Virus record (IMG/VR): IMGVR_UViG_3300025121_000282
Coordinates: 248,001-312,000 of that record
DNA length: 64,000 bases
Strand: one strand, 5' to 3'
Notes under the pieces: model-generated
What the model saw: the letters and a program-made list of their open reading frames with translations, nothing else
Told to the model about the DNA's origin: nothing
Databases searched by the model: none
Position numbers and translations under genes: made by a program
Part shown: positions 28,675 through 44,535 of the stretch, piece by piece
Layout: the number at the start of each line of letters is the position of its first letter
Numbering within the stretch: position 1 is the stretch's first letter

Positions 28675-29975
28675 TTTTGTTTACCAAATGTGGGAGTTCG
28701 CCCTCTTCTCTGCACATTAGGGTCCACCCCAGGGTTGTCGGTTATCATTGGCATTACTTCCCGTGTTTCTGGGTACCTGTCCACAGTATCAGAAACACTC
28801 GCCCTGTATCTAATGTCAGATTCTGGTATTACTGACAAAGAGAACTGTTGCTGAAGAATCATCCCTCTTGCAGAAGGTAATGTTATGCCCCCCACGGTGT
28901 ACCTATCCCCATTTTGTCTAACAATAAAGTCTCTTTGGGATAGTAGCGGTGATGGGCCCATGAACACTTCATACTGATGAGTGGTTACCAAGCCCCTTGG
29001 GTCACGCGTTACAGTTTTCGCCCCATCTGACGGAGCAATTATGATGTTGTACGGGCCGTCATACCCACCTACCCAACCAGTTCCGAGGCATGTCTGGCAA
29101 TCGTTCTCGGCTTGTTTGTGACTAGGATTCCAACACAGGCACCTAGTGCCATAAAATTTTCTTAAAAATACTTTTACTCTTTCTCCGCCTTGGTCTAAGA
29201 TCCATGCATTTCGCTTTACTGCTTCTGACCAAATCCAATCGGTTTCTTCAATTCTGTCTACTGTTAGTACATTACAGTCTTCAAGTCTAGACTCCACTGT
29301 CTCATTAGAATCAAATGGGTCTACAGCAACCGTAGTTACTTTGTAGGTGGTTCTACGAGTAGAAGTAGAAGTAGGTAGAACGGATCGGGTATAACTATAT
29401 GACAACGTACACGTGTCTACACCGATACTTGGTAGTATTGGTTCCACAAACTTACCCGTTTTTATGTTGTGAGACCGTCTTGTGTTCAATTCTATGTCGC
29501 CAGTATAACCAGTAACCCTAGCCACCTTTAGTGGCGTTCCGTTTATTTTAAATATAACATCGTTAGGAGAGTCTGCCAGCGCCCCATTTGTACTAGGTTT
29601 TGTTATTGGCGTGTGTGCTGGCACCAGTATGCACTCGTGGTGCATACTCCAACTGGTCTTAAACCTGTTAGACACATTTTCGTCTACAACGGATACGTCT
29701 ATTGTTTGGTCCCTATAAAACAGGGCGCCAATTGGGTCGTCATTTAGTTTATAGTACTCTCCAGCATCAGACCTGTATATATTTACACCCAGGATAGTGA
29801 ATTTGGAGTTAGCCGTAAACGTAGACGGGTCGTCCCACCTTAGGTCCACCATACCTTTTTGGTACGGTGGTAAGACCATAGCATTTATAGGGGGTATGGG
29901 TAAGGATGGTCTTTGTATTTCAAATGGAGACGGTTTTCTATCTGGTGTTGAAGCCATACTCACACTAAAACACAA
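28671..29975 (-). CDS. Neck/head-closure protein with N-terminal FN3-like domain and CxC...CxxC zinc site
   Basis: VDLRWDDP FN3-like start; GGERVKVFLRK.YGTRCLC...CQTCLGTGWVGGY. Confidence 0.6.
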   Translation of the reverse strand: MCFSVSMASTPDRKPSPFEIQRPSLPIPPINAMVLPPYQKGMVDLRWDDPSTFTANSKFTILGVNIYRSDAGEYYKLNDDPIGALFYRDQTIDVSVVDENVSNRFKTSWSMHHECILVPAHTPITKPSTNGALADSPNDVIFKINGTPLKVARVTGYTGDIELNTRRSHNIKTGKFVEPILPSIGVDTCTLSYSYTRSVLPTSTSTRRTTYKVTTVAVDPFDSNETVESRLEDCNVLTVDRIEETDWIWSEAVKRNAWILDQGGERVKVFLRKFYGTRCLCWNPSHKQAENDCQTCLGTGWVGGYDGPYNIIIAPSDGAKTVTRDPRGLVTTHQYEVFMGPSPLLSQRDFIVRQNGDRYTVGGITLPSARGMILQQQFSLSVIPESDIRYRASVSDTVDRYPETREVMPMITDNPGVDPNVQRRGRTPTFGKQN

Positions 29976-29987
29976 AAATCCTAGTCA

Positions 29988-31082
29988 TTGACAATAGCAC
30001 AGACACCACGAAGTACCATTGTGGAACATAACCAAGAAATCTGTCTGGTAGTCGGTGGGCCGCAGAAGCGATGGCAATGGATTGTCGAGTATCTCTCCAA
30101 AAACACCGGTACTAAAATCAGAGTGTGTGAACAAGGCCGCTTTTCTTTTGGTCGTAAGATCATCAACTCTTATGTACTGGTATTAAAAGATTTAATCGAC
30201 CATAGATTCAAAAACGAGATTATTAAGTGCACTGGAACCGGATGTACACTTGTGTACTCAGACAGAACAAGACCGGGATTAATCAAGGCTTTTGAGATTA
30301 TGGGTATAAGTAGCCTAGGACTTACTAGTACACACTCTAAAGAGGACAAGGTGGACAAGGTGGACAACATTGTGTTTGGTACTGACATAAATGAGTTGGT
30401 GCACGCCATCGCCAGTGGTACGAGTTGGTCACGATTGCACACCAAGCTGGTGCTGGAGTCGAAAGTAAATGTGGAACAAACTCCATTTGTTGAACAAGTC
30501 ACCAAGTGCGCCAAAGCAAACTGTCTAAGTATACCCAAAAACCCGCCCAACAGGTCACAGCCAAAAACGAAGATTGACCCAGAATTCTACCCAAACCTAG
30601 TACCGGAGGTATTACGGATTAAGGCTACCAACTCATGGATAGACACATTTCGCATTTTATACAATTCTGGCGTGCTACACCCCGAATCCACACTGTCTGG
30701 ATTTACACAGGGGATCAGAGCCGCCATTGCTAAAACTCCGGGTACTACTGTTGAGACTACTAGTGCCACTGAGACTGTTGTTCCAGACAGACAGTACTCT
30801 GCCGTCGAGTACGACGAAGTCTTCAGTAAGTGGCACGAGGGGGAAGAGGCCCTCAAAGCTGCAAAAACTGAATTGGAAGAGAAATCAGCAGAGTTGCGCA
30901 CACTGGAGGGCAAATTTGCTGCAGTTTCCATAAACCTTCAGATGATGACTAATAGGCTGAATGTCGCACCCACAGGCACTAAGCACGACCCGATCTTTTT
31001 GAAAATGTTGGTCGCTTTGGAATCGTCTTGCACAGAGAGAGGCCCATTCCATGCTCTGTGCAAGACGATCTTGGAAGATTAG
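29988..31082 (+). CDS. Hypothetical protein with C-terminal coiled coil
   Basis: 364-aa ORF; start uncertain (the track start is the TTG of a TTGACA). Confidence 0.6.
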   Translation: MTIAQTPRSTIVEHNQEICLVVGGPQKRWQWIVEYLSKNTGTKIRVCEQGRFSFGRKIINSYVLVLKDLIDHRFKNEIIKCTGTGCTLVYSDRTRPGLIKAFEIMGISSLGLTSTHSKEDKVDKVDNIVFGTDINELVHAIASGTSWSRLHTKLVLESKVNVEQTPFVEQVTKCAKANCLSIPKNPPNRSQPKTKIDPEFYPNLVPEVLRIKATNSWIDTFRILYNSGVLHPESTLSGFTQGIRAAIAKTPGTTVETTSATETVVPDRQYSAVEYDEVFSKWHEGEEALKAAKTELEEKSAELRTLEGKFAAVSINLQMMTNRLNVAPTGTKHDPIFLKMLVALESSCTERGPFHALCKTILED

Positions 31083-34268: not shown

Positions 34269-34997
34269 TCACACCTCTATCAACAATTTTGGGTTGAATT
34301 TTGGGTTTTCTGATTGACGGGCATACCCGAACGGGTTACATACGAACCGGGTCAGCCCTAGCGTTTTATCTGTCGAGTCGTGTGTATGCCCGTAGACCCA
34401 GAGCTTCGGAGTCACCAAAGTACAGTCATCGATTCCTCCGACGAAAAACGCATTAAGTTTGCTACCCTGCCAACGTTCAGTCACCAGATCGTTGTGCGGG
34501 ATCATATGGGTAACAACCACGTCTGTTTCCATGACATTCTTTTGGATCATGTCCACGTCTCGGCGTCCACGTTCATAGACCCACGGTTCGAATTTGCGAA
34601 TAGTTGTGAAATCAGCCATTGAGTCGCGCCCAAACTTCTTGGTGTACTGCTCAGGTTCAGGGAACCAAAGTGTACCACCAATAAATCGCCGCCCACTGAT
34701 AGTTACAGGTTCGTCCCGGAGAAGATAGATGTTCCCAAATTGGGAACACATGGCAGCAATCTCGGCCTCGGCGACTGCAGCCACGGACCCATAGAATTCA
34801 TGATTGCCGAGGGTGTATACTACATTTGCATATTTCTTCGAGAACGTGGTCAGGATCGTCTTCAAAGACCCACCTTGAAGGACGCCCACGTCTCCCGCGA
34901 GAACAGCAATGTCCGCGTCTGCCAAATCAGCAACGAGGCTTTCACCGTGGTCCCGGTGGAATTCTGCGTGGAGATCAGAAACAATCAGCAGTTTCAA
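34269..34997 (-). CDS. Calcineurin-like metallophosphoesterase
   Basis: SDLH, AGD, GNHE, THMIPH, GHTH motifs; TTG start. Confidence 0.92.
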   Translation of the reverse strand: MKLLIVSDLHAEFHRDHGESLVADLADADIAVLAGDVGVLQGGSLKTILTTFSKKYANVVYTLGNHEFYGSVAAVAEAEIAAMCSQFGNIYLLRDEPVTISGRRFIGGTLWFPEPEQYTKKFGRDSMADFTTIRKFEPWVYERGRRDVDMIQKNVMETDVVVTHMIPHNDLVTERWQGSKLNAFFVGGIDDCTLVTPKLWVYGHTHDSTDKTLGLTRFVCNPFGYARQSENPKFNPKLLIEV

Positions 34998-36281: not shown

Positions 36282-36586
36282 ATAATAATCCTTACGGTAA
36301 TGTCCGACTTAGCCAGCGGGTGTATTGGGTTTTTGGTAGGCACTATCACCGTGTCATTTAGCCATAAGATGGCTTCTGCGTGGCTTAAGTGTTGAGTTTC
36401 TGATGTTTTGTCAACTAAAGTCCAGAACTCTTCTTCTGGTATAACTATTTCTTCTAGTAGGCCGCAATACCCAGCAAAATTCATCCTGGTTTGCATAGCC
36501 CAAGCCAAACTAAAATAAAGTTTAGTTTTACCCTCAACTGTGAGCATGCGCTCACAAAGGGTGTCTATCTTTTGCATGTGTGTCAT
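36278..36586 (-). CDS. Hypothetical protein
   Basis: 102 aa; its SD (AAAGGA) directly follows the tRNA 3' end. Confidence 0.6.
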   Translation of the reverse strand: MTHMQKIDTLCERMLTVEGKTKLYFSLAWAMQTRMNFAGYCGLLEEIVIPEEEFWTLVDKTSETQHLSHAEAILWLNDTVIVPTKNPIHPLAKSDITVRIII

Positions 36587-36601
36587 ACATAGTCCTTTCG
36601 G

Positions 36602-36674
36602 TGCTCGCCCAGGGACTCGAACCCTGACCTGATCGATTTAGAGTCGACCCGCCTTGACATTTGGCCACACGAGC
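36602..36674 (-). tRNA. tRNA with CUA anticodon (amber suppressor type)
   Basis: GCTCGTG TG GCC AAATGTCAA GGC G GGTCGA CTCTAAA TCGATC AGGT CAGGG TTCGAGT CCCTG GGCGAGC A. Cloverleaf with a canonical T-arm and a C32 U33 CUA A37 A38 loop. Atypical points: G7.G66 mismatch, no D-loop GG, CCA not encoded (CCG). Confidence 0.85.
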
Positions 36675-36677
36675 GTG

Positions 36678-38213
36678 TTACTGTCTAAATAACACAAACT
36701 TTTTCTTTTCTTTACCAAACACTTTTACGTACCCTTTTGATTCAGCAAACTCCTTCTCTGTCATATGGCATCCAACGGCATGGTTGTATAAAGTCTTTTT
36801 GTGCATCATCCAACCAGTCGTGTCTACGTACACATAATCAGGCTTGGTAGTGGAAACATGTTCCCAATTTGAAGCTTGGTAGACGATGCCCTCATGGCCC
36901 ACGGTAGTATCGGCAAACGAAACTATTGCCTTGGTTTCTGGAAATTGGTCCCAGAAGTGTTTGGCCGATCTTGCTAAAAACCAAGACCCGAAATTAGGCT
37001 TGTGGCAGTCTGTTCTGATACAAAGTCTATCCAACTCCGACACTGTTTTTGGAGTAAGTCCTACTGAGGTGGACACCTCTTTTCTAACAACAGGAGCGAA
37101 CTTTGCCACTGCTATTAATTGGCCATCCAAGTAAGCCCCAAACATAAACTTTGCTTTACGACCACACTGGGCATAGTGCCAAGCTCTTAAAAATCTGTTA
37201 CCCTCAGAGTGCTCTATAGGCTTGACAATTAATTGGTTAAACTCGAATTCAGTTATTTTGGACTCGCTGACACCAATTACAGACTGAATTTTATCTTGAA
37301 CCAAATCAGGTATTAAAGTCTCATGCTCTTCTATACACAAAAGTAGTGAATCAGGGTTTGCAATTCTAAGATATGCTGATTTAGCAACGTCCCGCCTTTG
37401 GTTATTCGGAAGGTTGTGCCAATAATCACCTTGTACTTCAATGTATATATTAAAATCCGATAAATACAGGTCAAAATTATACGGACCCACAGATTTTTCT
37501 CTGGTGTATTTTATCTCAAGCAGGTCTAATACATCAGAAACCACTTTTTCAGGTTTAGACTGTCTGCCTGACCTAGAAAAGGCCTCTATACCAGCAGCTA
37601 TTTTAGCCCTGTACTCTGGATTTTTAAATCTTTCTTTTGCCAATTCACTGTGTATCTTTTTGTATTCTGGGTTCTGGATTGCCAAGTCATGGTTAGCTCT
37701 CGCCTCAGGCGTGTGCATTACTGACACTTTTTCCCTGAAGTATTTGTCTGGGTCGGCTTTATAATCCGCCTTGTTTCGTTCCGACACCAGCTGTTTATGC
37801 TGGTCTGACTGAAACATCTTGGTAATGCGGTCTTGCTGAAACTCCCTAAAATCTGGGTCTTCCCAAGCCTGTTTAGCTTGCTTAGACCTTTGGGCTCTGC
37901 CATCTTCAGAATTGGCTATGGCACCCAATATTTTTGACTGGTTGCTGACGTACTCTGGATTCGCCCAGGCTTGCTTGGATTGCTTAGACCTCTGAGCTTT
38001 TCCTTGAGGACTCTTAGCTCTGCACGGGGAACACCAGTATTCCCCGCGTTTTCTCAGAGTTCTATTTACAATAGACCTCTGATTGCATACAGACCTACCA
38101 CAACACTGATAGACTACCCACCCTCTTTGTTTAGGGGTGGGTAATCTATACCCAAAGTCTATTTCGTTGTGCTCTTGGTCGGAAATTTGTGCGTACAGTG
38201 TTGCTATATCCAT
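36678..38213 (-). CDS. Fusion: helical NUMOD-like repeats + DUF559/Vsr-like endonuclease + Mom-like GNAT domain
   Basis: KPEKVVSDVL...YNFDLYL....YIEVQGDYWH; C-term WHY...ELDRLC...SWFLARS...IVSFADTTVGHEGIVYQASNW. Confidence 0.75.
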   Translation of the reverse strand: MDIATLYAQISDQEHNEIDFGYRLPTPKQRGWVVYQCCGRSVCNQRSIVNRTLRKRGEYWCSPCRAKSPQGKAQRSKQSKQAWANPEYVSNQSKILGAIANSEDGRAQRSKQAKQAWEDPDFREFQQDRITKMFQSDQHKQLVSERNKADYKADPDKYFREKVSVMHTPEARANHDLAIQNPEYKKIHSELAKERFKNPEYRAKIAAGIEAFSRSGRQSKPEKVVSDVLDLLEIKYTREKSVGPYNFDLYLSDFNIYIEVQGDYWHNLPNNQRRDVAKSAYLRIANPDSLLLCIEEHETLIPDLVQDKIQSVIGVSESKITEFEFNQLIVKPIEHSEGNRFLRAWHYAQCGRKAKFMFGAYLDGQLIAVAKFAPVVRKEVSTSVGLTPKTVSELDRLCIRTDCHKPNFGSWFLARSAKHFWDQFPETKAIVSFADTTVGHEGIVYQASNWEHVSTTKPDYVYVDTTGWMMHKKTLYNHAVGCHMTEKEFAESKGYVKVFGKEKKKFVLFRQ

Positions 38214-38255
38214 ATATAACTATACAACCGTAACTATACGCTTTCGCAGTTACAT

Positions 38256-40679
38256 CTAACCCAAGTACACGTAGTCATCATGGAGAGCGCTGGTACCAAC
38301 CATCACCACGGGAAGTCCTGAGCAATTTTCCAGCATATCAATAAACGCTCTGGTTTCAGAGCTAAACTTGACTAATGCCTCTTTGCCCCCGCGCAGACCG
38401 ACGTCGATGTGGTTGATTTGATTCACAAAATTCAGTACAAGCTTGGTTGCACCGCAGGTTCTAGCAGCGTCCTTAAGCCCAATTTGGGAGAATGTCCCTA
38501 CGCGTCGAATGCGCTTAGTAACCGTGGTTCGCTCGCGTTCCGCCAACATTTTTGCCTCTTCCTCTGGCATGTTGGCTCTCTTTGCTATCTCATCCCAGGT
38601 CAATTCCTGTTGGTCGGGGTACCACCCTCCAGAATTCCCCAGTTCTTTGCCAGACTCGTCATACACGTTTCCAACCCTAATTGGGTGCGACCTTAAGTTT
38701 AAGTAGACGTCGCCCACCATGTTTGGGGGAATGGCCATATAGTCCATGGCTGCCTGAACTGTGCAGTTTCTAGAAGTGCAGTTTGGATAGTGTGAGCCGT
38801 GGTCAATACTCAGTGCATAGCCCTGGCTTCCTTCATGGAGCCAGTAGTCACCCTTACTGATGATTTTGTGGGTGGCATCACGAAATGCCATGCCGTTGGT
38901 GATTTGAATGTTTCCAGGGAGGTCTATTGGTGCTGGTGTGTTACCAACCAGGGGCACATTCTGCTTCCGTAAAACCTTATCAGCCAGGGCGGTCCCGGAA
39001 CCCTGCATAGTGGAGGCTAGGTGCTTGGTGCTTTCTGCTCCCTCACGCTCTCGTGCAGCGTGGTCCTCGGTTACAATACCTGCACGATCATGAACATAAA
39101 GGTCTGGTCCACCACACTCCTCATACTCCTTGATGAACTGTTCCCAACGAAAAGATGAACCGGGAGAAATCCATCCAGCAACCTCACGGCCAAGTGCTTT
39201 CTTCAGACCGCATGCGGTGGGCAGAGCCTTGGCTACAAACTTCCCATCTTTCAAATTCGGGTGAGCAATAGTGTTGTGTGAAATAGCACCATTGGCTAGA
39301 TAACTGTGGGTTTGGGGCATGGTTACATCAAAAACCCGTTCTTCCCCAATTGCCAAATTGACTTCTTTGATGTCTACTACATGATAGTCCTCGGCCAATT
39401 TAACTAAGCCGGTAAATCCAGCCGCTCGGAGTGTGGCGGCATTGCGTAAAACATACGCACCTGCGATGGCTCCATTCTCAGTTGAATTCGTGCTGTGTGC
39501 AGCTTTGCGTATTTGAATCAAACGGTTATAATTGAGATTGATGAGAGAGCCTTGAGACCAATCAGCATCGTATGTGGCTATTTCCACATTTAATCTAGCC
39601 GACTTGACCTCTGAAAGAAAACCTACTCGCTCACGAAAAAGGGTTAAATTTTCCAAACCCGCCATCTCAATTTGATGTGATCGACTGCGAGAAGGTCGCT
39701 TGTCCTGGTAGGACCGGTAAGTGGAATTAATACCCAACAACAATAATAACTGTTGGGCCATCAGCACCACATCTTTTGAAATGTTGCCAAAAGAAACCCT
39801 TCGCTTTTTGGCCGACCCATCCGAGTCAAACAGACCCCGCAGAAATGCTCCAATTATTTCAGGGGTGCCCACAGTGACAGCAGTCGGTATCTCTTTTTCG
39901 GCTTTAGTAGCTAGCTTCAACCCCACTTGTTCAAAGATCTGGCGAAGTTCGGAAATACTGCAGGTTTCCAGAACGTGGCACTGTTTGTCTTTTACCTTGT
40001 AAACATTCCATGGGATGCCGATGCCATCGTAAAATTTTTGAGTCTTGCAGCAAACATCCATCTGGTCAGAGTGGAACGCTATGCTAACATTTGCCTTTTT
40101 GGGACTGTAACACCCATCACCAACCAACAGCCCCAGGTATTCAGCCATTAATAATTCGTCTGGTTTATTTGTCAGTGCGGTTCCATTCGCTCTGTGTATC
40201 AGGGATAACATGTCTATAGGTAGACTGGTTCCCACCCAGTTAGTCTTTTTAGGAAATAAAAACTGGTGTACTCCAGGTACTAAATCCATTGACCGTATCC
40301 ACTGTGGGGCGTTTTCAGTGGGGTCCCAAACATAGTACTGATGTATGTCAGTACATTTGTACTCAATGCCATTCTTGAGTTTGATTTTGTTGACTACTCT
40401 AACCCCGTCATCAACCAAATCTGTAGGCGACTCCCAACAGCCGTCCATGTTGAGAAGCTGCAGACCCTTTTGGTTCTGAGTGACAATATCCCCAAGCTTT
40501 TTTAATCCCCGGTCAGTGGGGATTATGGCGTCAAAAGTTTGACAGTGGCCTGCATTGGGATAGTTGGCAGAAGACACATTTCGGACATTGAAAATATCCA
40601 CCAAACGAGACGACAAAGCTCCCTTACCTGAGCTACCCCAGGCTTGGTCGAGGACAACATTGAACTTTCCAGGCTGCAT
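38256..40679 (-). CDS. purZ: Adenylosuccinate-synthetase homologue with PurZ signatures, interrupted by an intein
   Basis: GSSGKG (Ser in place of the PurA catalytic Asp), NAGH|T, ASTMQG, EGSQGY...YPNCTSR, RSHPIRVG, NSGGWYPDQ.ELTW, TTVTKRIRR, NFVN. Confidence 0.8.
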   Translation of the reverse strand: MQPGKFNVVLDQAWGSSGKGALSSRLVDIFNVRNVSSANYPNAGHCQTFDAIIPTDRGLKKLGDIVTQNQKGLQLLNMDGCWESPTDLVDDGVRVVNKIKLKNGIEYKCTDIHQYYVWDPTENAPQWIRSMDLVPGVHQFLFPKKTNWVGTSLPIDMLSLIHRANGTALTNKPDELLMAEYLGLLVGDGCYSPKKANVSIAFHSDQMDVCCKTQKFYDGIGIPWNVYKVKDKQCHVLETCSISELRQIFEQVGLKLATKAEKEIPTAVTVGTPEIIGAFLRGLFDSDGSAKKRRVSFGNISKDVVLMAQQLLLLLGINSTYRSYQDKRPSRSRSHQIEMAGLENLTLFRERVGFLSEVKSARLNVEIATYDADWSQGSLINLNYNRLIQIRKAAHSTNSTENGAIAGAYVLRNAATLRAAGFTGLVKLAEDYHVVDIKEVNLAIGEERVFDVTMPQTHSYLANGAISHNTIAHPNLKDGKFVAKALPTACGLKKALGREVAGWISPGSSFRWEQFIKEYEECGGPDLYVHDRAGIVTEDHAAREREGAESTKHLASTMQGSGTALADKVLRKQNVPLVGNTPAPIDLPGNIQITNGMAFRDATHKIISKGDYWLHEGSQGYALSIDHGSHYPNCTSRNCTVQAAMDYMAIPPNMVGDVYLNLRSHPIRVGNVYDESGKELGNSGGWYPDQQELTWDEIAKRANMPEEEAKMLAERERTTVTKRIRRVGTFSQIGLKDAARTCGATKLVLNFVNQINHIDVGLRGGKEALVKFSSETRAFIDMLENCSGLPVVMVGTSALHDDYVYLG
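39273..40544 (-). mobile_element. Intein (424 aa) with LAGLIDADG homing endonuclease
   Basis: Starts CQTFDAII, ends VFDVTM...HSYLANGAISHN, with Thr at +1. LAGLIDADG blocks YLGLLVGDG and FLRGLFDSDG. Confidence 0.95.
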
Positions 40680-40681
40680 GA

Positions 40682-42370
40682 CTAAACTCTCCTAACCCAC
40701 TTGGTTTTTGGCACCTCTGATACTGTACAGAGACCGGTATACTCTACAAACTGTCGTTCTGTCATATGGTTTGACAGTGCTTGATCATACACAGTACGTT
40801 TGTGTATGTATCTCACTGTGACTGGGTCAAAATAATGATACGATTCCCCGGTCTGGCCCGCTTCAATAAAACTACAGGCTTTGTACAAGCCACCAGAATC
40901 ACCAACATTGGGGTCAGAAAATGAAACCAGTAACTTTAGCTTTGGGCTTTCTGATTTATAGGCACCAATTAACTTAGACATACAGTAAGAAGATAGATTA
41001 TTCACATCCAGTCCAGACCTTACGCAAAACCGTCTAATCTCTCTGACACTACCTGGATTCAACTTACCCAGCCCCAGTTGCTCTGCGGTTTTTTTGACAG
41101 TTCCGTGTCGGGTTACACCACCAAATACCAGCAAACACACCAATGTGTCCTTAAAATAAGCCCCATAGGGAGAGGCTGCTGTCCCCAAAGTGCCCAAGTA
41201 ATGATTGGTGGTTAGAAACACGTGGGCTTCTTTTAACGGAACAGGTCTAAACTCCAAGTCCGACAACTGAAATTGTATTGGTTCTTCAATGGCTCGCAAA
41301 ATGTGATAGTCCAACACTTTACGAAGTCTTCCCAGATGCAGTTCATGCTCCCATAACCACACTAACTTATACTTTGAATACTTTTCTATGTATGTAGCTT
41401 TGGCCTTATCTCTGGGTGTTCCAGAGTACCCGTTGTCTTTAAAATTGTGAAGATAATCACCATGGGTCTCTATCAACAAATTGCATAATGGTACATAAAA
41501 ATCAAACGAGTATGGGCCCACCGTGAAACTGCGTTCGAATGGAACCTTATAGTGGGACTCCAAAATGGAGGCTACTATCCTTTCTGTAGTAGGGTTCTGT
41601 AATTTCTCTTTGACACCCGGGATGTCAAAACCAGATTCTGACCCGTATAATTTCAGTAAGGTAGTTCTGCGTTTAATGGCTTTACATTTGGCAGACCCAC
41701 AGGTTAACGGGTGGGCCTGGGTGTAATACGACATCTTGGTTTCAGAGGTATTGTCACACACATAACACTTATAAATTATGGTCTTTTCACACAGTGGGAA
41801 TATTTTCGTGGCCTTGTACCCAAATTTAACAAACGTGGCATCGTCATCAGCCCATGCATAGTCTGGGGGCTTTCGTTTCGACAACCAAAAGTCATGCTTA
41901 CTTTGTGTGGATTCTTCGCGAATCCAAGTAGCAGCCACAGGACTGCACAGTTTGCAGCACACTACTTTGTTGCTTCTGGATAGACTTTGCAAACTGGTAG
42001 TGTACTGCTCTAGGCAAAATTCACATACAGCTTCAACAGCTTTTTCTGACCTTGGAGACAGTGTGTCTAGGCCATACCCATGTTTGGCTATGGTCAACAA
42101 AGAGTCTGCCCCAGCGGGCCGTTTAAGTACACTTAATAAATAGTACTCTCTAGGTGTTGTTTGTTTCTGCCTTACCCAATGAGATTTTAACTGATCGCAG
42201 CCCGAACAGGCATCTGGCGGAACGCGTCCAGGTTTGGAAAACTGATATTTCTTCCTCTCAAACACTTCTAAACAGAAATCGCATTGCACCACTACAGGTT
42301 TCTTAGACTGTGGCGCTAAGTCACTGTACCGATATCCGTATTTCTCAACAGTCAAGTCATCTTGGTGCAT
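40682..42370 (-). CDS. Fusion: three CxxC zinc-ribbon repeats + DUF559/Vsr-like endonuclease + Mom-like GNAT domain
   Basis: Repeats (T.xKxGY...S.K.V...CxxC) x3; ERIVASIL...YSFDFYV....LIETHGDYLH; NHY...EIRRFC...LVSFSDPNVGDSGGLYKACSF. Likely start is the ATG at 42370, 6 nt after TATAAT. Confidence 0.75.
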   Translation of the reverse strand: MHQDDLTVEKYGYRYSDLAPQSKKPVVVQCDFCLEVFERKKYQFSKPGRVPPDACSGCDQLKSHWVRQKQTTPREYYLLSVLKRPAGADSLLTIAKHGYGLDTLSPRSEKAVEAVCEFCLEQYTTSLQSLSRSNKVVCCKLCSPVAATWIREESTQSKHDFWLSKRKPPDYAWADDDATFVKFGYKATKIFPLCEKTIIYKCYVCDNTSETKMSYYTQAHPLTCGSAKCKAIKRRTTLLKLYGSESGFDIPGVKEKLQNPTTERIVASILESHYKVPFERSFTVGPYSFDFYVPLCNLLIETHGDYLHNFKDNGYSGTPRDKAKATYIEKYSKYKLVWLWEHELHLGRLRKVLDYHILRAIEEPIQFQLSDLEFRPVPLKEAHVFLTTNHYLGTLGTAASPYGAYFKDTLVCLLVFGGVTRHGTVKKTAEQLGLGKLNPGSVREIRRFCVRSGLDVNNLSSYCMSKLIGAYKSESPKLKLLVSFSDPNVGDSGGLYKACSFIEAGQTGESYHYFDPVTVRYIHKRTVYDQALSNHMTERQFVEYTGLCTVSEVPKTKWVRRV

Positions 42371-42478
42371 ACCTGCATTATACACAAAAGTGTGGCACTA
42401 ACGGCAAGGGTGCTATACATTAAAAATTACTTCGTACTTGGTTGTACAATACCATCAGACCCACAACAGGAAGACACA

Positions 42479-42739
42479 ATGAATAAGTTTGACATTGTCG
42501 ATGCTATCATGCAACCGCACAACATTAACTTTTCTTTTGCCAAAGGGGAGGTAGTGGCTTGTCTAACTTATCCAGGGCAGAACACTGTGGGGGGCATACC
42601 CATGGTGTTAAAACTTGAGACGAGCGGCCACAACTTTATGGTACAACCATTTGCGGCTGGAACAACCAAAGAAGAGGTTAAGGCTAGACTTTGTGATCAG
42701 GTAGACAGACTGTTTATGGCCATTGCCGATATTTTATAA
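42479..42739 (+). CDS. Hypothetical protein
   Basis: ATG at 42479 with SD AGGA. Confidence 0.6.
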   Translation: MNKFDIVDAIMQPHNINFSFAKGEVVACLTYPGQNTVGGIPMVLKLETSGHNFMVQPFAAGTTKEEVKARLCDQVDRLFMAIADIL

Positions 42740-43334: not shown

Positions 43335-43470
43335 GGGGCTCTCTCCATCTTTGTTGCGTAGACACTATTAATTTTACATTTGTGGGCCCCAAATAACAAC
43401 TCCTATGGTGCACTTCTAAATACAGATTGACAAGCAGGTGTGGTACACAAATTATTTGTTGGAGGGTTAC

Positions 43471-44535
43471 ATGTCTAATTTAGATTTCGATCTAGTAAAA
43501 CACACAATAGTCATGACGAGAGGTGGGTCTGTCTCTTATGGAATGGCTACGCCCACCTCGGATTTAGACATCAAGGGTATTTTTATACCCCCAGAAGAGT
43601 ATACCCTAGGGTTTTATCTAAATTGTGAAACCATCAATAAGAACGAGGATTTAGAACTGTTTAGACACTTGTTAAATCAAGATAGTCTCAGGTATGTTGA
43701 CAATGGCCTTGAGGGGTCTGTTTATTCATTAGTAAAATACTTATTCTTAGCCGCCAAGGGAAACCCAAACATACTGGAAGTACTGTTTTGCGAAGAGGAA
43801 GATGTAATACACACCTCTGAGGAGGGTGAGATTCTTCGTGAGCACAGAGGTCTATTTTTAACCCAAGTTGTTAGACACCAATACGTTAGATATGCAATGG
43901 CTCAACTTGAAGATATTAAACGGCACAAGTCGTATTTGCTTAACCCCATAAAAAACAAGCCCACCCGATCTGATTTTGGGCTACCTACCCAGCCTGCAAT
44001 TAAGAAACACAAACTCGGGCTAATTGAAGCTGCAATTAAAAAACAGACAGACAGAGGGTACACTAGAGACCAAGCATTAAAAATTTTGGTAACGTACCCT
44101 GAGTACGAGAAGGACTTAAGTACACCAAACTTTATTGCAAATCTAAATGGGGAGGCTGCTTATACCAGTGCCGCCACTACATACACACGTCAGCAGCTTC
44201 ATTGGGAAAATAGAAACGCAAAAAGGGCAGCATTAGAGGCAAAGTATGGATTTGATACTAAACACACCTCACATGTTGTTAGGCTACTAAAAACGGGGCA
44301 TGAGATTTTAACTCAAGGGAAGTTAACAGTCCGCAGACCAGATTTCGAGGAATTGTTGGCTATCCGTGCTGGCTCATGGAGTTATGAGGAAGTAATGACT
44401 TGGGCCAATGACATGGTAAGAAAAATAAATTATGACTCTTTGGATTCCCCAATTCCATTAGAGCCGGATATGGTGGCTATCAACAATTTGTGTGTAAGAT
44501 TACACAAGATGTTTTACAAAAAGTTGGGATTTTGA
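43471..44535 (+). CDS. RlaP/YcgL-like Pol-beta nucleotidyltransferase (RNA-repair associated family)
   Basis: GGSVSYGMATPTSDLDIKGIF, KGNPNILEVLF, FDTKHTSHVVRLL, LLAIRAGSW; SD GGAGG. Confidence 0.85.
   Translation: MSNLDFDLVKHTIVMTRGGSVSYGMATPTSDLDIKGIFIPPEEYTLGFYLNCETINKNEDLELFRHLLNQDSLRYVDNGLEGSVYSLVKYLFLAAKGNPNILEVLFCEEEDVIHTSEEGEILREHRGLFLTQVVRHQYVRYAMAQLEDIKRHKSYLLNPIKNKPTRSDFGLPTQPAIKKHKLGLIEAAIKKQTDRGYTRDQALKILVTYPEYEKDLSTPNFIANLNGEAAYTSAATTYTRQQLHWENRNAKRAALEAKYGFDTKHTSHVVRLLKTGHEILTQGKLTVRRPDFEELLAIRAGSWSYEEVMTWANDMVRKINYDSLDSPIPLEPDMVAINNLCVRLHKMFYKKLGF

What the first reader, a model, noticed from the sequence alone, without database searches (positions are those of the whole stretch)
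36678..42382. purZ flanked by two endonuclease-Mom-like GNAT fusion paralogs
Seen: both neighbours of purZ have a variable repeat N-terminus (helical repeats vs three CxxC ribbons), a DUF559/Vsr-like nuclease and a C-terminal HY...E(L/I)xRxC...(I/L)VSFxD...G..Y.A domain. Established: Mu Mom is a GNAT-fold adenine-modifying enzyme, and Vsr-like nucleases nick at mismatches or modified bases. Inference: this is either an adenine/Z hypermodification-plus-discrimination module (modify self, cut non-self DNA) or selfish Hef-like homing endonucleases concentrated around purZ.
Basis: partly seen in the sequence, partly recalled or inferred. Interest (0 to 1): 0.75.

Follow-up and report, generated by a model that had tools for sequence, protein, structure and literature searches.

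The report
Homing endonuclease genes flanking purZ
Two selfish, mobile nuclease genes of the already known Hef-like homing-endonuclease family, each ending in a still unexplained Mom-like domain, sit on either side of an intein-invaded purZ gene in a groundwater jumbo phage: a known kind of element in an interesting place.

Summary
ORF A (36678-38213, -) and ORF B (40682-42385, -) flank an intein-containing purZ (38256-40679, -). Both have a variable DNA-binding N-terminus, a Vsr-like EDxHD nuclease domain and a C-terminal Mom-like GNAT domain, confirmed by sequence and by structure prediction.

They are best read as free-standing Hef-like homing endonuclease genes, not a purZ-dedicated modification module.
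- The fusion family is large: 308 relatives in IMG/VR and 414 cultured-phage records, with up to 11 scattered copies per genome.
- Each clade sits beside its own conserved gene: sigma factor, major capsid protein, portal, sheath, clamp loader or purZ.
- A belongs to a clade that always lies at the 3' end of purZ. B's clade is only partly linked to purZ.
- Ten of ten PurZ loci found with PurZ itself lack both genes.
- purZ also carries two different inteins at two sites in different phages.

One thing remains unexplained. The Mom active-site residues (H58, Y59, R111, S124, D149, Y159) are near-invariant across the family, but essential R151 is always replaced. A DNA-modifying activity therefore cannot be excluded.

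Verdict: new members of a known kind; moderate interest.

The parts
36678..38213 (-). ORF A, 511 aa: free-standing Hef-like (EDxHD) homing endonuclease gene at the 3' end of purZ
37572..38213 (-). A residues 1-214: Cys4 zinc ribbon (C37/38/43, C61, C64) plus 4-5 helical repeats with W.(N/D)P(E/D)(Y/F). Presumed modular DNA-binding region
   Evidence: Weak DUF7487 and GerD-like Pfam hits
37254..37571 (-). A residues 215-320: Vsr-like EDxHD nuclease domain. Catalytic E222, D248, (Q261), H266, D275
36681..37253 (-). A residues 321-511: Mom-like GNAT domain. H346, Y347, R396, S410, D435, Y445 are conserved. T437 stands in place of Mom R151. The HTH-like insertion is retained
38256..40679 (-). purZ-like succino-aminodeoxyadenylate synthetase gene, 807 aa precursor
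39273..40544 (-). LAGLIDADG intein (C46-N469) inserted in the NAGH|T active-site motif of PurZ
40682..42385 (-). ORF B, 567 aa: second Hef-like homing endonuclease gene, from a different clade. Its stop codon lies 2 nt before the purZ start
41600..42385 (-). B residues 1-262: three zinc-ribbon repeats of about 85 aa. The Cys residues are invariant or near-invariant in 33 homologues
41288..41599 (-). B residues 263-366: EDxHD nuclease domain. E268, D295, (H308), H313, D326
40685..41287 (-). B residues 367-567: Mom-like GNAT domain. H395, Y396, R452, S466, D491, Y501 are conserved. N493 stands in place of Mom R151

Best explanation
A and B are two independently acquired, free-standing homing endonuclease genes of the Hef-like (EDxHD, Vsr-fold) family. 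They have settled at the 3' end (A) and the 5' end (B) of purZ, a conserved gene that also hosts a LAGLIDADG intein.

Proposed mechanism.
- A flexible N-terminal array reads a long DNA site. In A this is a zinc ribbon plus helical repeats; in B it is three zinc ribbons.
- The central Vsr-like domain cuts DNA with its E/D/H/D metal site.
- The C-terminal Mom-like GNAT domain keeps Mom's DNA-facing HTH-like insertion and base pocket. It adds a further DNA grip or base check, and may or may not still transfer a group.
- In a co-infection with a related phage whose purZ region lacks the gene, the enzyme cuts in or beside that purZ allele. Recombinational repair from the carrier genome then copies the endonuclease gene, and neighbouring purZ sequence, into the recipient.

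Shown here: the domain identities, the intact catalytic residues, the family distribution, the clade-to-neighbour specificity and the presence/absence among PurZ loci.

Inferred: cleavage, the position of the target, homing itself, and the role of the GNAT domain.
For: 1. Fold and residues. The nuclease matches I-Bth0305I (E 3e-4, Z 13.1, 32% identity) and Vsr (Z 12.2). The equivalents of D196, H213 and D222 are invariant in 36 of 36 and 32-33 of 33 homologues. PADLOC's 'HEase' model hits A 213-311.

2. Homology to annotated homing endonucleases. Full-length PHROG matches go to phrog_559 and phrog_3339. Alignments cover nuclease plus GNAT of Yersinia JC221 'Hef-like HE' (between gp24 and gp23), Klebsiella Muenster 'homing endonuclease EDxHD' (beside primase-helicase), Campylobacter Los1, Tenacibaculum PTm5 and Vibrio K471 (both after the major capsid gene). 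Taylor et al. 2011 place Hef-type enzymes in the EDxHD family (PMC3239194).

3. Selfish-element distribution. There are 308 IMG/VR relatives, with 2-3 scattered copies on many contigs. There are 414 phage records and 982 places, up to 11 per genome.

4. Clade-specific neighbours. These are sigma factor (10 of 11), gp23, T4 portal, tail sheath, clamp loader, subtilase and purZ.

5. Position of A and B. A plus six homologues form a clade (SH-aLRT 98) that always lies at the purZ 3' end, in both orientations. B sits in a separate clade (support 100) in which 2 of 5 members lie at the purZ 5' end.

6. Presence and absence. Ten of ten IMG/VR PurZ loci (40-59% identity) have neither gene within 6 kb. 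One of these contigs carries a family member about 25 kb away instead.

7. purZ as a hot spot. The window has an intein at NAGH|T. L025 has an unrelated intein at HYPN|C, together with the same A/purZ/B trio.

8. The genome has at least four intein-bearing ORFs.
Against: - No cleavage, target site or mobility has been shown for A, B or any close relative.
- No allele lacking the endonuclease gene or the intein was seen in the contigs of four groundwater runs.
- The A clade and PurZ show matching sub-groupings, (L007, L031) and (L004, L029, L025). The pair persists in genomes that share no other flanking gene. This fits long co-inheritance and would also be expected of a functional partnership.
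- Near-invariant Mom catalytic residues are more than a pure DNA-binding role requires.
- In this genome the family is not scattered: both copies flank purZ.
Confidence: 0.75

Rival explanations
1. Dual-function enzymes. The Mom-like domain is catalytically active and modifies adenine (or 2-aminoadenine) N6 at or near the enzyme's own site, for example to shield the carrier allele or to mark processed DNA. Hef-like endonucleases would then be single-chain cut-and-modify elements.
For: - Mom residues H58, Y59, R111 and Y159 are invariant, and S124 and D149 near-invariant (34-35 of 36), in a diverse set of 36. They are conserved in 27-33 of 33 B-type proteins.
- S124, R111, H58 and Y159 equivalents persist even in distant cultured Hef-like proteins.
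- The HTH-like insertion that is essential in Mom is the best-conserved motif of the family.
- Mom is the top structural match, above generic GNATs (Z 17.3 against 14.6 or less).
- Nuclease and GNAT were found together in 89 of 90 family ORFs.
Against: - Mom R151, whose alanine mutant has no detectable activity, is Thr, Asn or Ser in every member examined.
- W48, needed for Mom dimerisation, is not conserved.
- In T4-type Hef-like proteins, Y59 and D149 are often replaced, and Pfam Mom no longer matches.
- A freely acting modifier would protect the target genome as well, which works against homing.
Confidence: 0.2
2. A purZ-dedicated functional module. A and B discriminate or process A- versus Z-containing DNA, modifying self and cutting non-self, as accessories of the Z-genome pathway.
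For: - All 7 members of the A clade, plus an independent deep branch (L012), sit at the 3' end of an adenylosuccinate-synthetase-like gene in phages with no other shared synteny.
- The trio recurs in L025.
- The A sub-groupings match the PurZ tree.
- A base-flipping adenine-N6 pocket could in principle sense the 2-amino group.
Against: - Ten of ten PurZ loci found through PurZ lack the genes.
- 76 of the 80 best family loci have no purZ within 5 kb.
- B-type relatives at 43-45% identity lie elsewhere.
- Cultured PurZ phages (about 40-kb Vibrio, Acinetobacter, Arthrobacter and Microbacterium phages) and cultured Hef-like carriers look like different sets. Arthrobacter phage Wayne has no match.
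- The same architecture sits beside capsid, portal, sheath and sigma-factor genes.
- No DatZ-, MazZ- or MazG-type gene was detected in this genome, so a Z genome is itself unproven.
Confidence: 0.08
3. Decaying or inactive relics of former homing endonuclease genes that are merely tolerated next to purZ.
For: Homing endonuclease genes commonly degenerate after fixation. No empty-site alleles were seen in the source populations. A few B-type relatives have D149 changed to His or Asn.
Against: Both ORFs are full length. Every nuclease and GNAT signature residue and all zinc-ribbon cysteines are intact. Both align end to end at 36-52% identity with many relatives, which indicates purifying selection.
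Confidence: 0.05

Closest known systems
Hef and Hef-like free-standing homing endonucleases of T4-related, ViI-like, Campylobacter, phiKZ-like and AR9-like phages (Sandegren et al. 2005, cited in PMC3296691; F-LimIII/VII/VIII/X of LIMEstone1)
   Same: Same three-part layout: variable N-terminus, Vsr-like nuclease, C-terminal GNAT-like domain. The alignment runs across nuclease plus GNAT. They are free-standing genes between conserved phage genes and occur in multiple copies per genome.
   Different: Only 22-25% identity. In the T4-type proteins the GNAT part is too diverged for Pfam Mom, with Y59 and D149 often replaced. A and B keep them. The neighbour here is purZ, and the N-terminal modules differ.
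I-Bth0305I, the prototype EDxHD homing endonuclease (PDB 3r3p; Taylor et al. 2011, PMC3239194)
   Same: The nuclease domain is homologous (E 3e-4; Z 13.1; 95 of 98 residues aligned; 32% identity). Equivalents of E170, D196, H213 and D222 are conserved, and the DNA-binding region is N-terminal.
   Different: I-Bth0305I is intron-encoded in recA, is 266 aa long, and ends with the nuclease domain. It has no GNAT domain.
Phage Mu Mom (PDB 8bv8; PMC13219725), the Gly-tRNA-dependent adenine-N6 DNA-modifying GNAT
   Same: Best structural match of the C-terminal domain (Z 17.3, Foldseek E 1e-11). The Pfam Mom match is above threshold. H58, Y59, R111, S124, D149 and Y159 are conserved, and the HTH-like insertion is retained.
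   Different: About 20% identity. Essential R151 is replaced by Thr or Asn, and the dimerisation residue W48 is not kept. The domain is fused behind a nuclease rather than standing alone. No modification is known.
Vsr very-short-patch repair endonuclease (PDB 1cw0) and DUF559-type endonuclease-like proteins (3hrl)
   Same: Shared nuclease fold (Z 12.2, rmsd 1.8 over 98 residues; Z 11.9) and the metal-binding Asp and general-base His.
   Different: Sequence similarity is marginal: Pfam Vsr E 0.08, below threshold. There is no sign of mismatch-repair context.

Membership tests
Hef-like / EDxHD homing endonucleases | Vsr-like nuclease fold | tested here: met
   The model of the A core matches 3r3p at Z 13.1 and 1cw0 at Z 12.2. 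Sequence match to 3r3p has E 3e-4.
Hef-like / EDxHD homing endonucleases | Composite E-D-x-H-D catalytic motif | tested here: met
   A has E222, D248, Q261, H266, D275. B has E268, D295, H308, H313, D326. D, H and D are invariant in 36 of 36 and 32-33 of 33 relatives.
Hef-like / EDxHD homing endonucleases | Detectable homology to proteins annotated as Hef-like homing endonucleases | tested here: met
   tblastn and BLASTP to JC221 give E 7e-16 over 476 columns. My nuclease and GNAT HMMs hit it at 6e-11 and 9e-7. PHROG 559 and 3339 match at full length.
Hef-like / EDxHD homing endonucleases | Free-standing gene beside conserved genes, with presence/absence among related genomes and lineage-specific insertion sites | tested here: met
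   Ten of ten PurZ loci are empty. Clades are tied to the sigma factor, gp23, portal, sheath, clamp loader and purZ genes.
Hef-like / EDxHD homing endonucleases | Site-specific double-strand cleavage of the allele lacking the gene, and gene conversion (homing) | not testable with these tools
   This needs biochemistry or co-infection experiments. Contigs of four runs showed no empty-site alleles.
Mom family (PF25680) of DNA adenine-N6 modifying GNATs | Profile match above the curated threshold, with Mom as nearest fold | tested here: met
   Pfam scores are 98.5 and 68 bits against a cut-off of 27.1. 8bv8 is the top hit by Foldseek (E 1e-11) and by VIA-align (Z 17.3).
Mom family (PF25680) of DNA adenine-N6 modifying GNATs | Complete set of residues essential for momylation: H58, Y59, R111, S124, D149, R151, Y159 | tested here: not met
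   Six of the seven are conserved. R151 is T437 in A and N493 in B, and is never Arg in 69 relatives.
Mom family (PF25680) of DNA adenine-N6 modifying GNATs | HTH-like insertion between the last strands, and a W48-dependent dimer | tested here: inconclusive
   A two-helix insertion is present and highly conserved. The W48 equivalent is Ser in A. The homodimer prediction gave no answer.
Mom family (PF25680) of DNA adenine-N6 modifying GNATs | Installs an N6-adenine hypermodification on dsDNA | not testable with these tools
   Requires expression followed by LC-MS or long-read kinetics.
Z-genome gene set (purZ with datZ/mazZ/dpoZ-type partners) | Consistent co-occurrence with purZ across phages | tested here: not met
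   Met only for the A clade (7 of 7). None of the 10 PurZ-derived loci and only 4 of the 80 best family loci show linkage. Cultured PurZ phages and cultured Hef-like carriers look like different sets, and Wayne has no match.

The most novel reading that the evidence does not exclude
Hef-like homing endonucleases, including A and B, would be bifunctional. Their conserved Mom-like GNAT domain would still chemically modify a flipped-out purine (adenine or 2-aminoadenine) at or near the cleavage site, using a donor or geometry that no longer needs Mom's R151. The selfish element would then both cut naive alleles and mark or shield processed ones. In the purZ-linked clade the pocket could additionally distinguish A from Z.
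Probability: 0.15. Interest if true: 0.75.

Novelty: new member of a known kind. Interest (0 to 1): 0.42.

Why it matters
- It shows that purZ, the signature gene of 2-aminoadenine genomes, is a recurrent landing site for selfish DNA in jumbo phages. Two endonuclease lineages and two unrelated inteins are involved. This implies frequent co-infection and recombination among PurZ-encoding phages, and gives a route by which purZ alleles could be co-converted between them.
- It corrects an attractive but unsupported idea of a purZ-specific modification module.
- It highlights an under-described fact. The widespread Hef-like endonucleases carry a Mom-like domain whose catalytic residues are conserved. 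After the 2026 demonstration that Mom uses Gly-tRNA to modify DNA, this becomes a directly testable question.

Tried and rejected
- Near-identical DNA in the phage collection: none found.
- Homodimer prediction of the nuclease+GNAT core, to test whether the GNAT domain supplies dimerisation: the tool returned 'no answer', so it is not used as evidence.
- Laying contigs of four groundwater runs on 36500-42499 to find alleles lacking an endonuclease gene or the intein: no joints were seen, and coverage was fragmentary in the low-share runs.
- Group I/II intron search around the genes: only a tRNA was found, so A and B are not intron-encoded.
- Promoter and terminator scans: nothing above background worth interpreting.
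- Literature searches for Mom plus Hef, Vsr or homing endonuclease, and for PurZ inteins: no paper in the held library describes the fusion or a PurZ intein. Sandegren 2005 is not held.
- Apparent overlap between A's hits and PurZ hosts (Arthrobacter, Microbacterium). This was rejected. Those hits cover only the GNAT part, in stand-alone 'acetyltransferase' or Mom-like genes of other phage clusters, and the PurZ phage Wayne has no match.
- In-situ tandem duplication of A and B. This was rejected because they fall in different well-supported clades, each with closer relatives elsewhere.
- TAG recoding as an explanation for the adjacent suppressor tRNA: there is no sign of it in the window.
Full report
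**What is there**

The window is part of a 314,886-bp IMG/VR virus record that recurs in several groundwater metagenomes. Three minus-strand ORFs occupy 36678-42385:
- A, 36678-38213, 511 aa.
- A purZ-like gene, 38256-40679, 807 aa.
- B, 40682-42385, 567 aa.

B's stop codon lies 2 nt before the purZ start. A starts 42 nt after the purZ stop. The three genes are therefore tightly packed and co-oriented.

The middle gene is an adenylosuccinate-synthetase homologue. It is closest to solved PurZ enzymes (6fko/6fm1 E 3.5e-22; 7odx E 4e-19; bacterial PurA about 1e-6) and to NCBIfam amino_Aden_PurZ. A 424-aa LAGLIDADG intein (C46-N469) interrupts it in the NAGH|T motif.

**Anatomy of A and B**

- Both end in a domain that matches Pfam Mom above threshold (A 328-487, E 5e-28; B 377-540, E 1e-18) and PHROG 1384 'Mom-like DNA modification protein'.
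- Full-length matches go to PHROGs annotated as homing or HNH endonucleases.
[quoted passage not shown] A 327-472 aligns with Mu Mom (8bv8, E 8e-4).
- An AlphaFold model of the A core (297 aa, 36-row alignment, pLDDT 91.8) splits into two domains. Residues 3-102 match 3r3p (Z 13.1, 32% identity) and Vsr (Z 12.2). Residues 111-297 match Mom as the best of all PDB representatives (Z 17.3; Foldseek E 1e-11).
- The N-termini differ. A has a Cys4 ribbon plus 4-5 helical repeats. B has three zinc-ribbon repeats of about 85 aa. Their cysteines are invariant or near-invariant in 33 homologues, and they fold as separate beads in the B model (pLDDT 86.8, pTM 0.47).
- A and B share only 30% identity over the core.

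**Catalytic residues**

Nuclease. Mapping the 3r3p alignment onto the residues named by Taylor et al. (PMC3239194) gives E222, D248, Q261, H266, D275 in A and E268, D295, H308, H313, D326 in B. The D, H and D positions are invariant in 36 of 36 diverse relatives and in 32-33 of 33 B-type relatives.

GNAT. The 2026 Mom study names H58, Y59, R111, S124, D149, R151 and Y159 as active-site residues. S124A is dead and R151A has no detectable activity (PMC13219725). In A these positions are H346, Y347, R396, S410, D435, T437 and Y445. In B they are H395, Y396, R452, S466, D491, N493 and Y501.

Across relatives, six of the seven are invariant or nearly so. The R151 position is Thr, Asn or Ser and never Arg. 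The two-helix insertion that is essential in Mom is present and carries the family's best-conserved motif. The GNAT site is thus not degenerate, but it is not a complete Mom site either.

**What family this is**

tblastn finds proteins aligning over nuclease plus GNAT in cultured phages, annotated as 'Hef-like homing endonuclease' or 'homing endonuclease EDxHD'. They sit in classic free-standing positions:
- between gp24 and gp23 in Yersinia JC221;
- beside the primase-helicase gene in Klebsiella Muenster, where there are two copies within 4 kb;
- between tail and head genes in Campylobacter Los1;
- after the major capsid gene in Tenacibaculum PTm5 and Vibrio K471.

The JC221 protein is hit by my nuclease and GNAT HMMs (6e-11 and 9e-7), although Pfam Mom no longer sees it. 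In an alignment of these proteins with A and B, the nuclease residues and the equivalents of H58, R111, S124 and Y159 are invariant, while Y59 and D149 vary.

With JC221 as query, the family occupies 414 phage records and 982 places, up to 11 per genome. One annotator already calls it 'putative nuclease/acetyltransferase'. Taylor et al. state that Hef-type endonucleases belong to the Vsr-like EDxHD family. LIMEstone1 lists four Hef-like free-standing endonucleases (PMC3296691).

A phmmer search of 1.84 billion cluster representatives with A's GNAT part found 1,777 relatives. In nearly all of the best 150, the domain lies at the C-terminus of a 300-870-aa protein.

**Linkage to purZ**

From the PurZ side, ten IMG/VR loci encode PurZ at 40-59% identity. 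None has a nuclease/GNAT ORF within 6 kb.

From the endonuclease side:
- The closest relatives of A (45-52% identity) lie at the 3' end of purZ. Most are convergent with it (L004, L007, L010, L025, L029-L032). A more distant one (L012, 37% identity) is co-directional with its adenylosuccinate-synthetase-like gene, as A is in the window.
- None of these loci shares any other flanking gene with the window.
- A 38%-identity relative instead sits before a clamp-loader gene.
- Of the 80 best IMG/VR loci (308 relatives found), only the top four are purZ-adjacent. Many contigs carry 2-3 scattered copies. The contig with the closest PurZ has its copy about 25 kb away from purZ.
- B-type relatives at 43-45% identity lie downstream of a giant ORF, not near purZ.
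- L025 repeats the whole trio, with A-like at the purZ 3' end and B-like at the 5' end, both inverted relative to the window.

A tree of 91 cores gives three results:
- A falls in a clade of seven that are all at the purZ 3' end (SH-aLRT 98). This clade is nested among 24 members not adjacent to purZ.
- B falls in a separate clade of five (support 100), of which two are at the purZ 5' end.
- L012 lies on an independent deep branch.

Other clades each have their own neighbour: a sigma factor (10 of 11), gp23, T4-type portal, tail sheath, clamp loader and a subtilase. This lineage-to-site pattern is what homing endonuclease families show.

In cultured phages, the PurZ carriers are Arthrobacter, Microbacterium, Acinetobacter and roughly 40-kb Vibrio phages. 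The full-length Hef-like carriers look like a different set. A's hits in Arthrobacter and Microbacterium phages are stand-alone GNAT genes of other clusters, and Wayne has no match.

**purZ as a hot spot**

L025's PurZ (60% identical exteins) lacks the NAGH|T intein. It carries an unrelated Hint/LAGLIDADG_2 intein at HYPN|C, a site that is uninterrupted in the window. The window's genome has at least four intein-bearing ORFs. Two inteins at two sites plus two endonuclease lineages at the two gene ends argue that purZ is simply a well-conserved, frequently recombined target.

**Points in favour of the rival readings**

- The A clade and PurZ share sub-groupings. HEG-plus and HEG-minus PurZ alleles interleave only in a poorly resolved tree.
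- No empty-site alleles were seen in the source populations.
- The GNAT active site is under clear purifying selection.

I therefore keep a 0.15-0.2 probability that the GNAT domain is an active DNA-modifying module, and under 0.1 that the genes are functionally dedicated to Z-DNA. Whether this phage has Z-DNA at all is unproven. A PurB-like lyase is present, but no HD/DatZ, MazG or DUF550/MazZ profile matched.

**Verdict**

A and B are new members, with purZ-end-specific lineages, of the known Hef-like EDxHD homing endonuclease family. The open and testable question is what the conserved Mom-like domain does in this family.

Noticed in passing
window 36600-36674 (-): A tRNA with anticodon CTA (amber suppressor; ARAGORN labels it tRNA-Pyl; Rfam tRNA 45.9 bits) lies 3 nt downstream of ORF A's stop. 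TAG still ends 13 of 50 long ORFs in the window, so no recoding is evident here.
   Followed up: partly
window 39273-40544 (-); L025:3619-5958: The window's PurZ carries a LAGLIDADG_3 intein at NAGH|T. A 60%-identical PurZ in L025 has an unrelated Hint/LAGLIDADG_2 intein at HYPN|C instead. No paper in the held library mentions PurZ inteins.
   Followed up: partly
G000:C1 5603-5833, 26040-26267, 46917-47165 (loci L109, L111, L112): Three further LAGLIDADG matches lie inside large ORFs (1162, 1068 and 955 aa) elsewhere in the genome. The phage is rich in inteins. The host genes were not identified.
   Followed up: no
whole genome G000; L114 = G000:C1:227686-231519: A PurB-like adenylosuccinate lyase is encoded about 55 kb from purZ. 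No HD (DatZ), MazG or DUF550 (MazZ) Pfam match was found, so the usual Z-genome partners are missing or too diverged.
   Followed up: partly
L010:535-2487 (-): A second, very divergent nuclease+Mom-like gene (648 aa) lies next to a thyX (Thy1) gene in the same contig that has an A-type gene at purZ.
   Followed up: no
L028:6001-9904: A B-type relative (45% identity) lies just upstream of radical-SAM and QueC genes, which are 7-deazaguanine pathway genes, in a 222-kb phage contig.
   Followed up: no
window 34269-34997 (-) and 43438-44535 (+): A calcineurin-like metallophosphoesterase and an RlaP-type (RNA-repair-pathway pol-beta-like) nucleotidyltransferase flank the region. Most other neighbours have no Pfam match.
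   Followed up: no
phage records MZ456037.1 about 29962-30411 and MK737944.1 about 29701-30150: In Microbacterium phages Pickles13 and Warren, a stand-alone Mom-like 'acetyltransferase' sits directly beside a ParB-like nuclease-domain gene. This may be an unfused nuclease/GNAT pairing.
   Followed up: no
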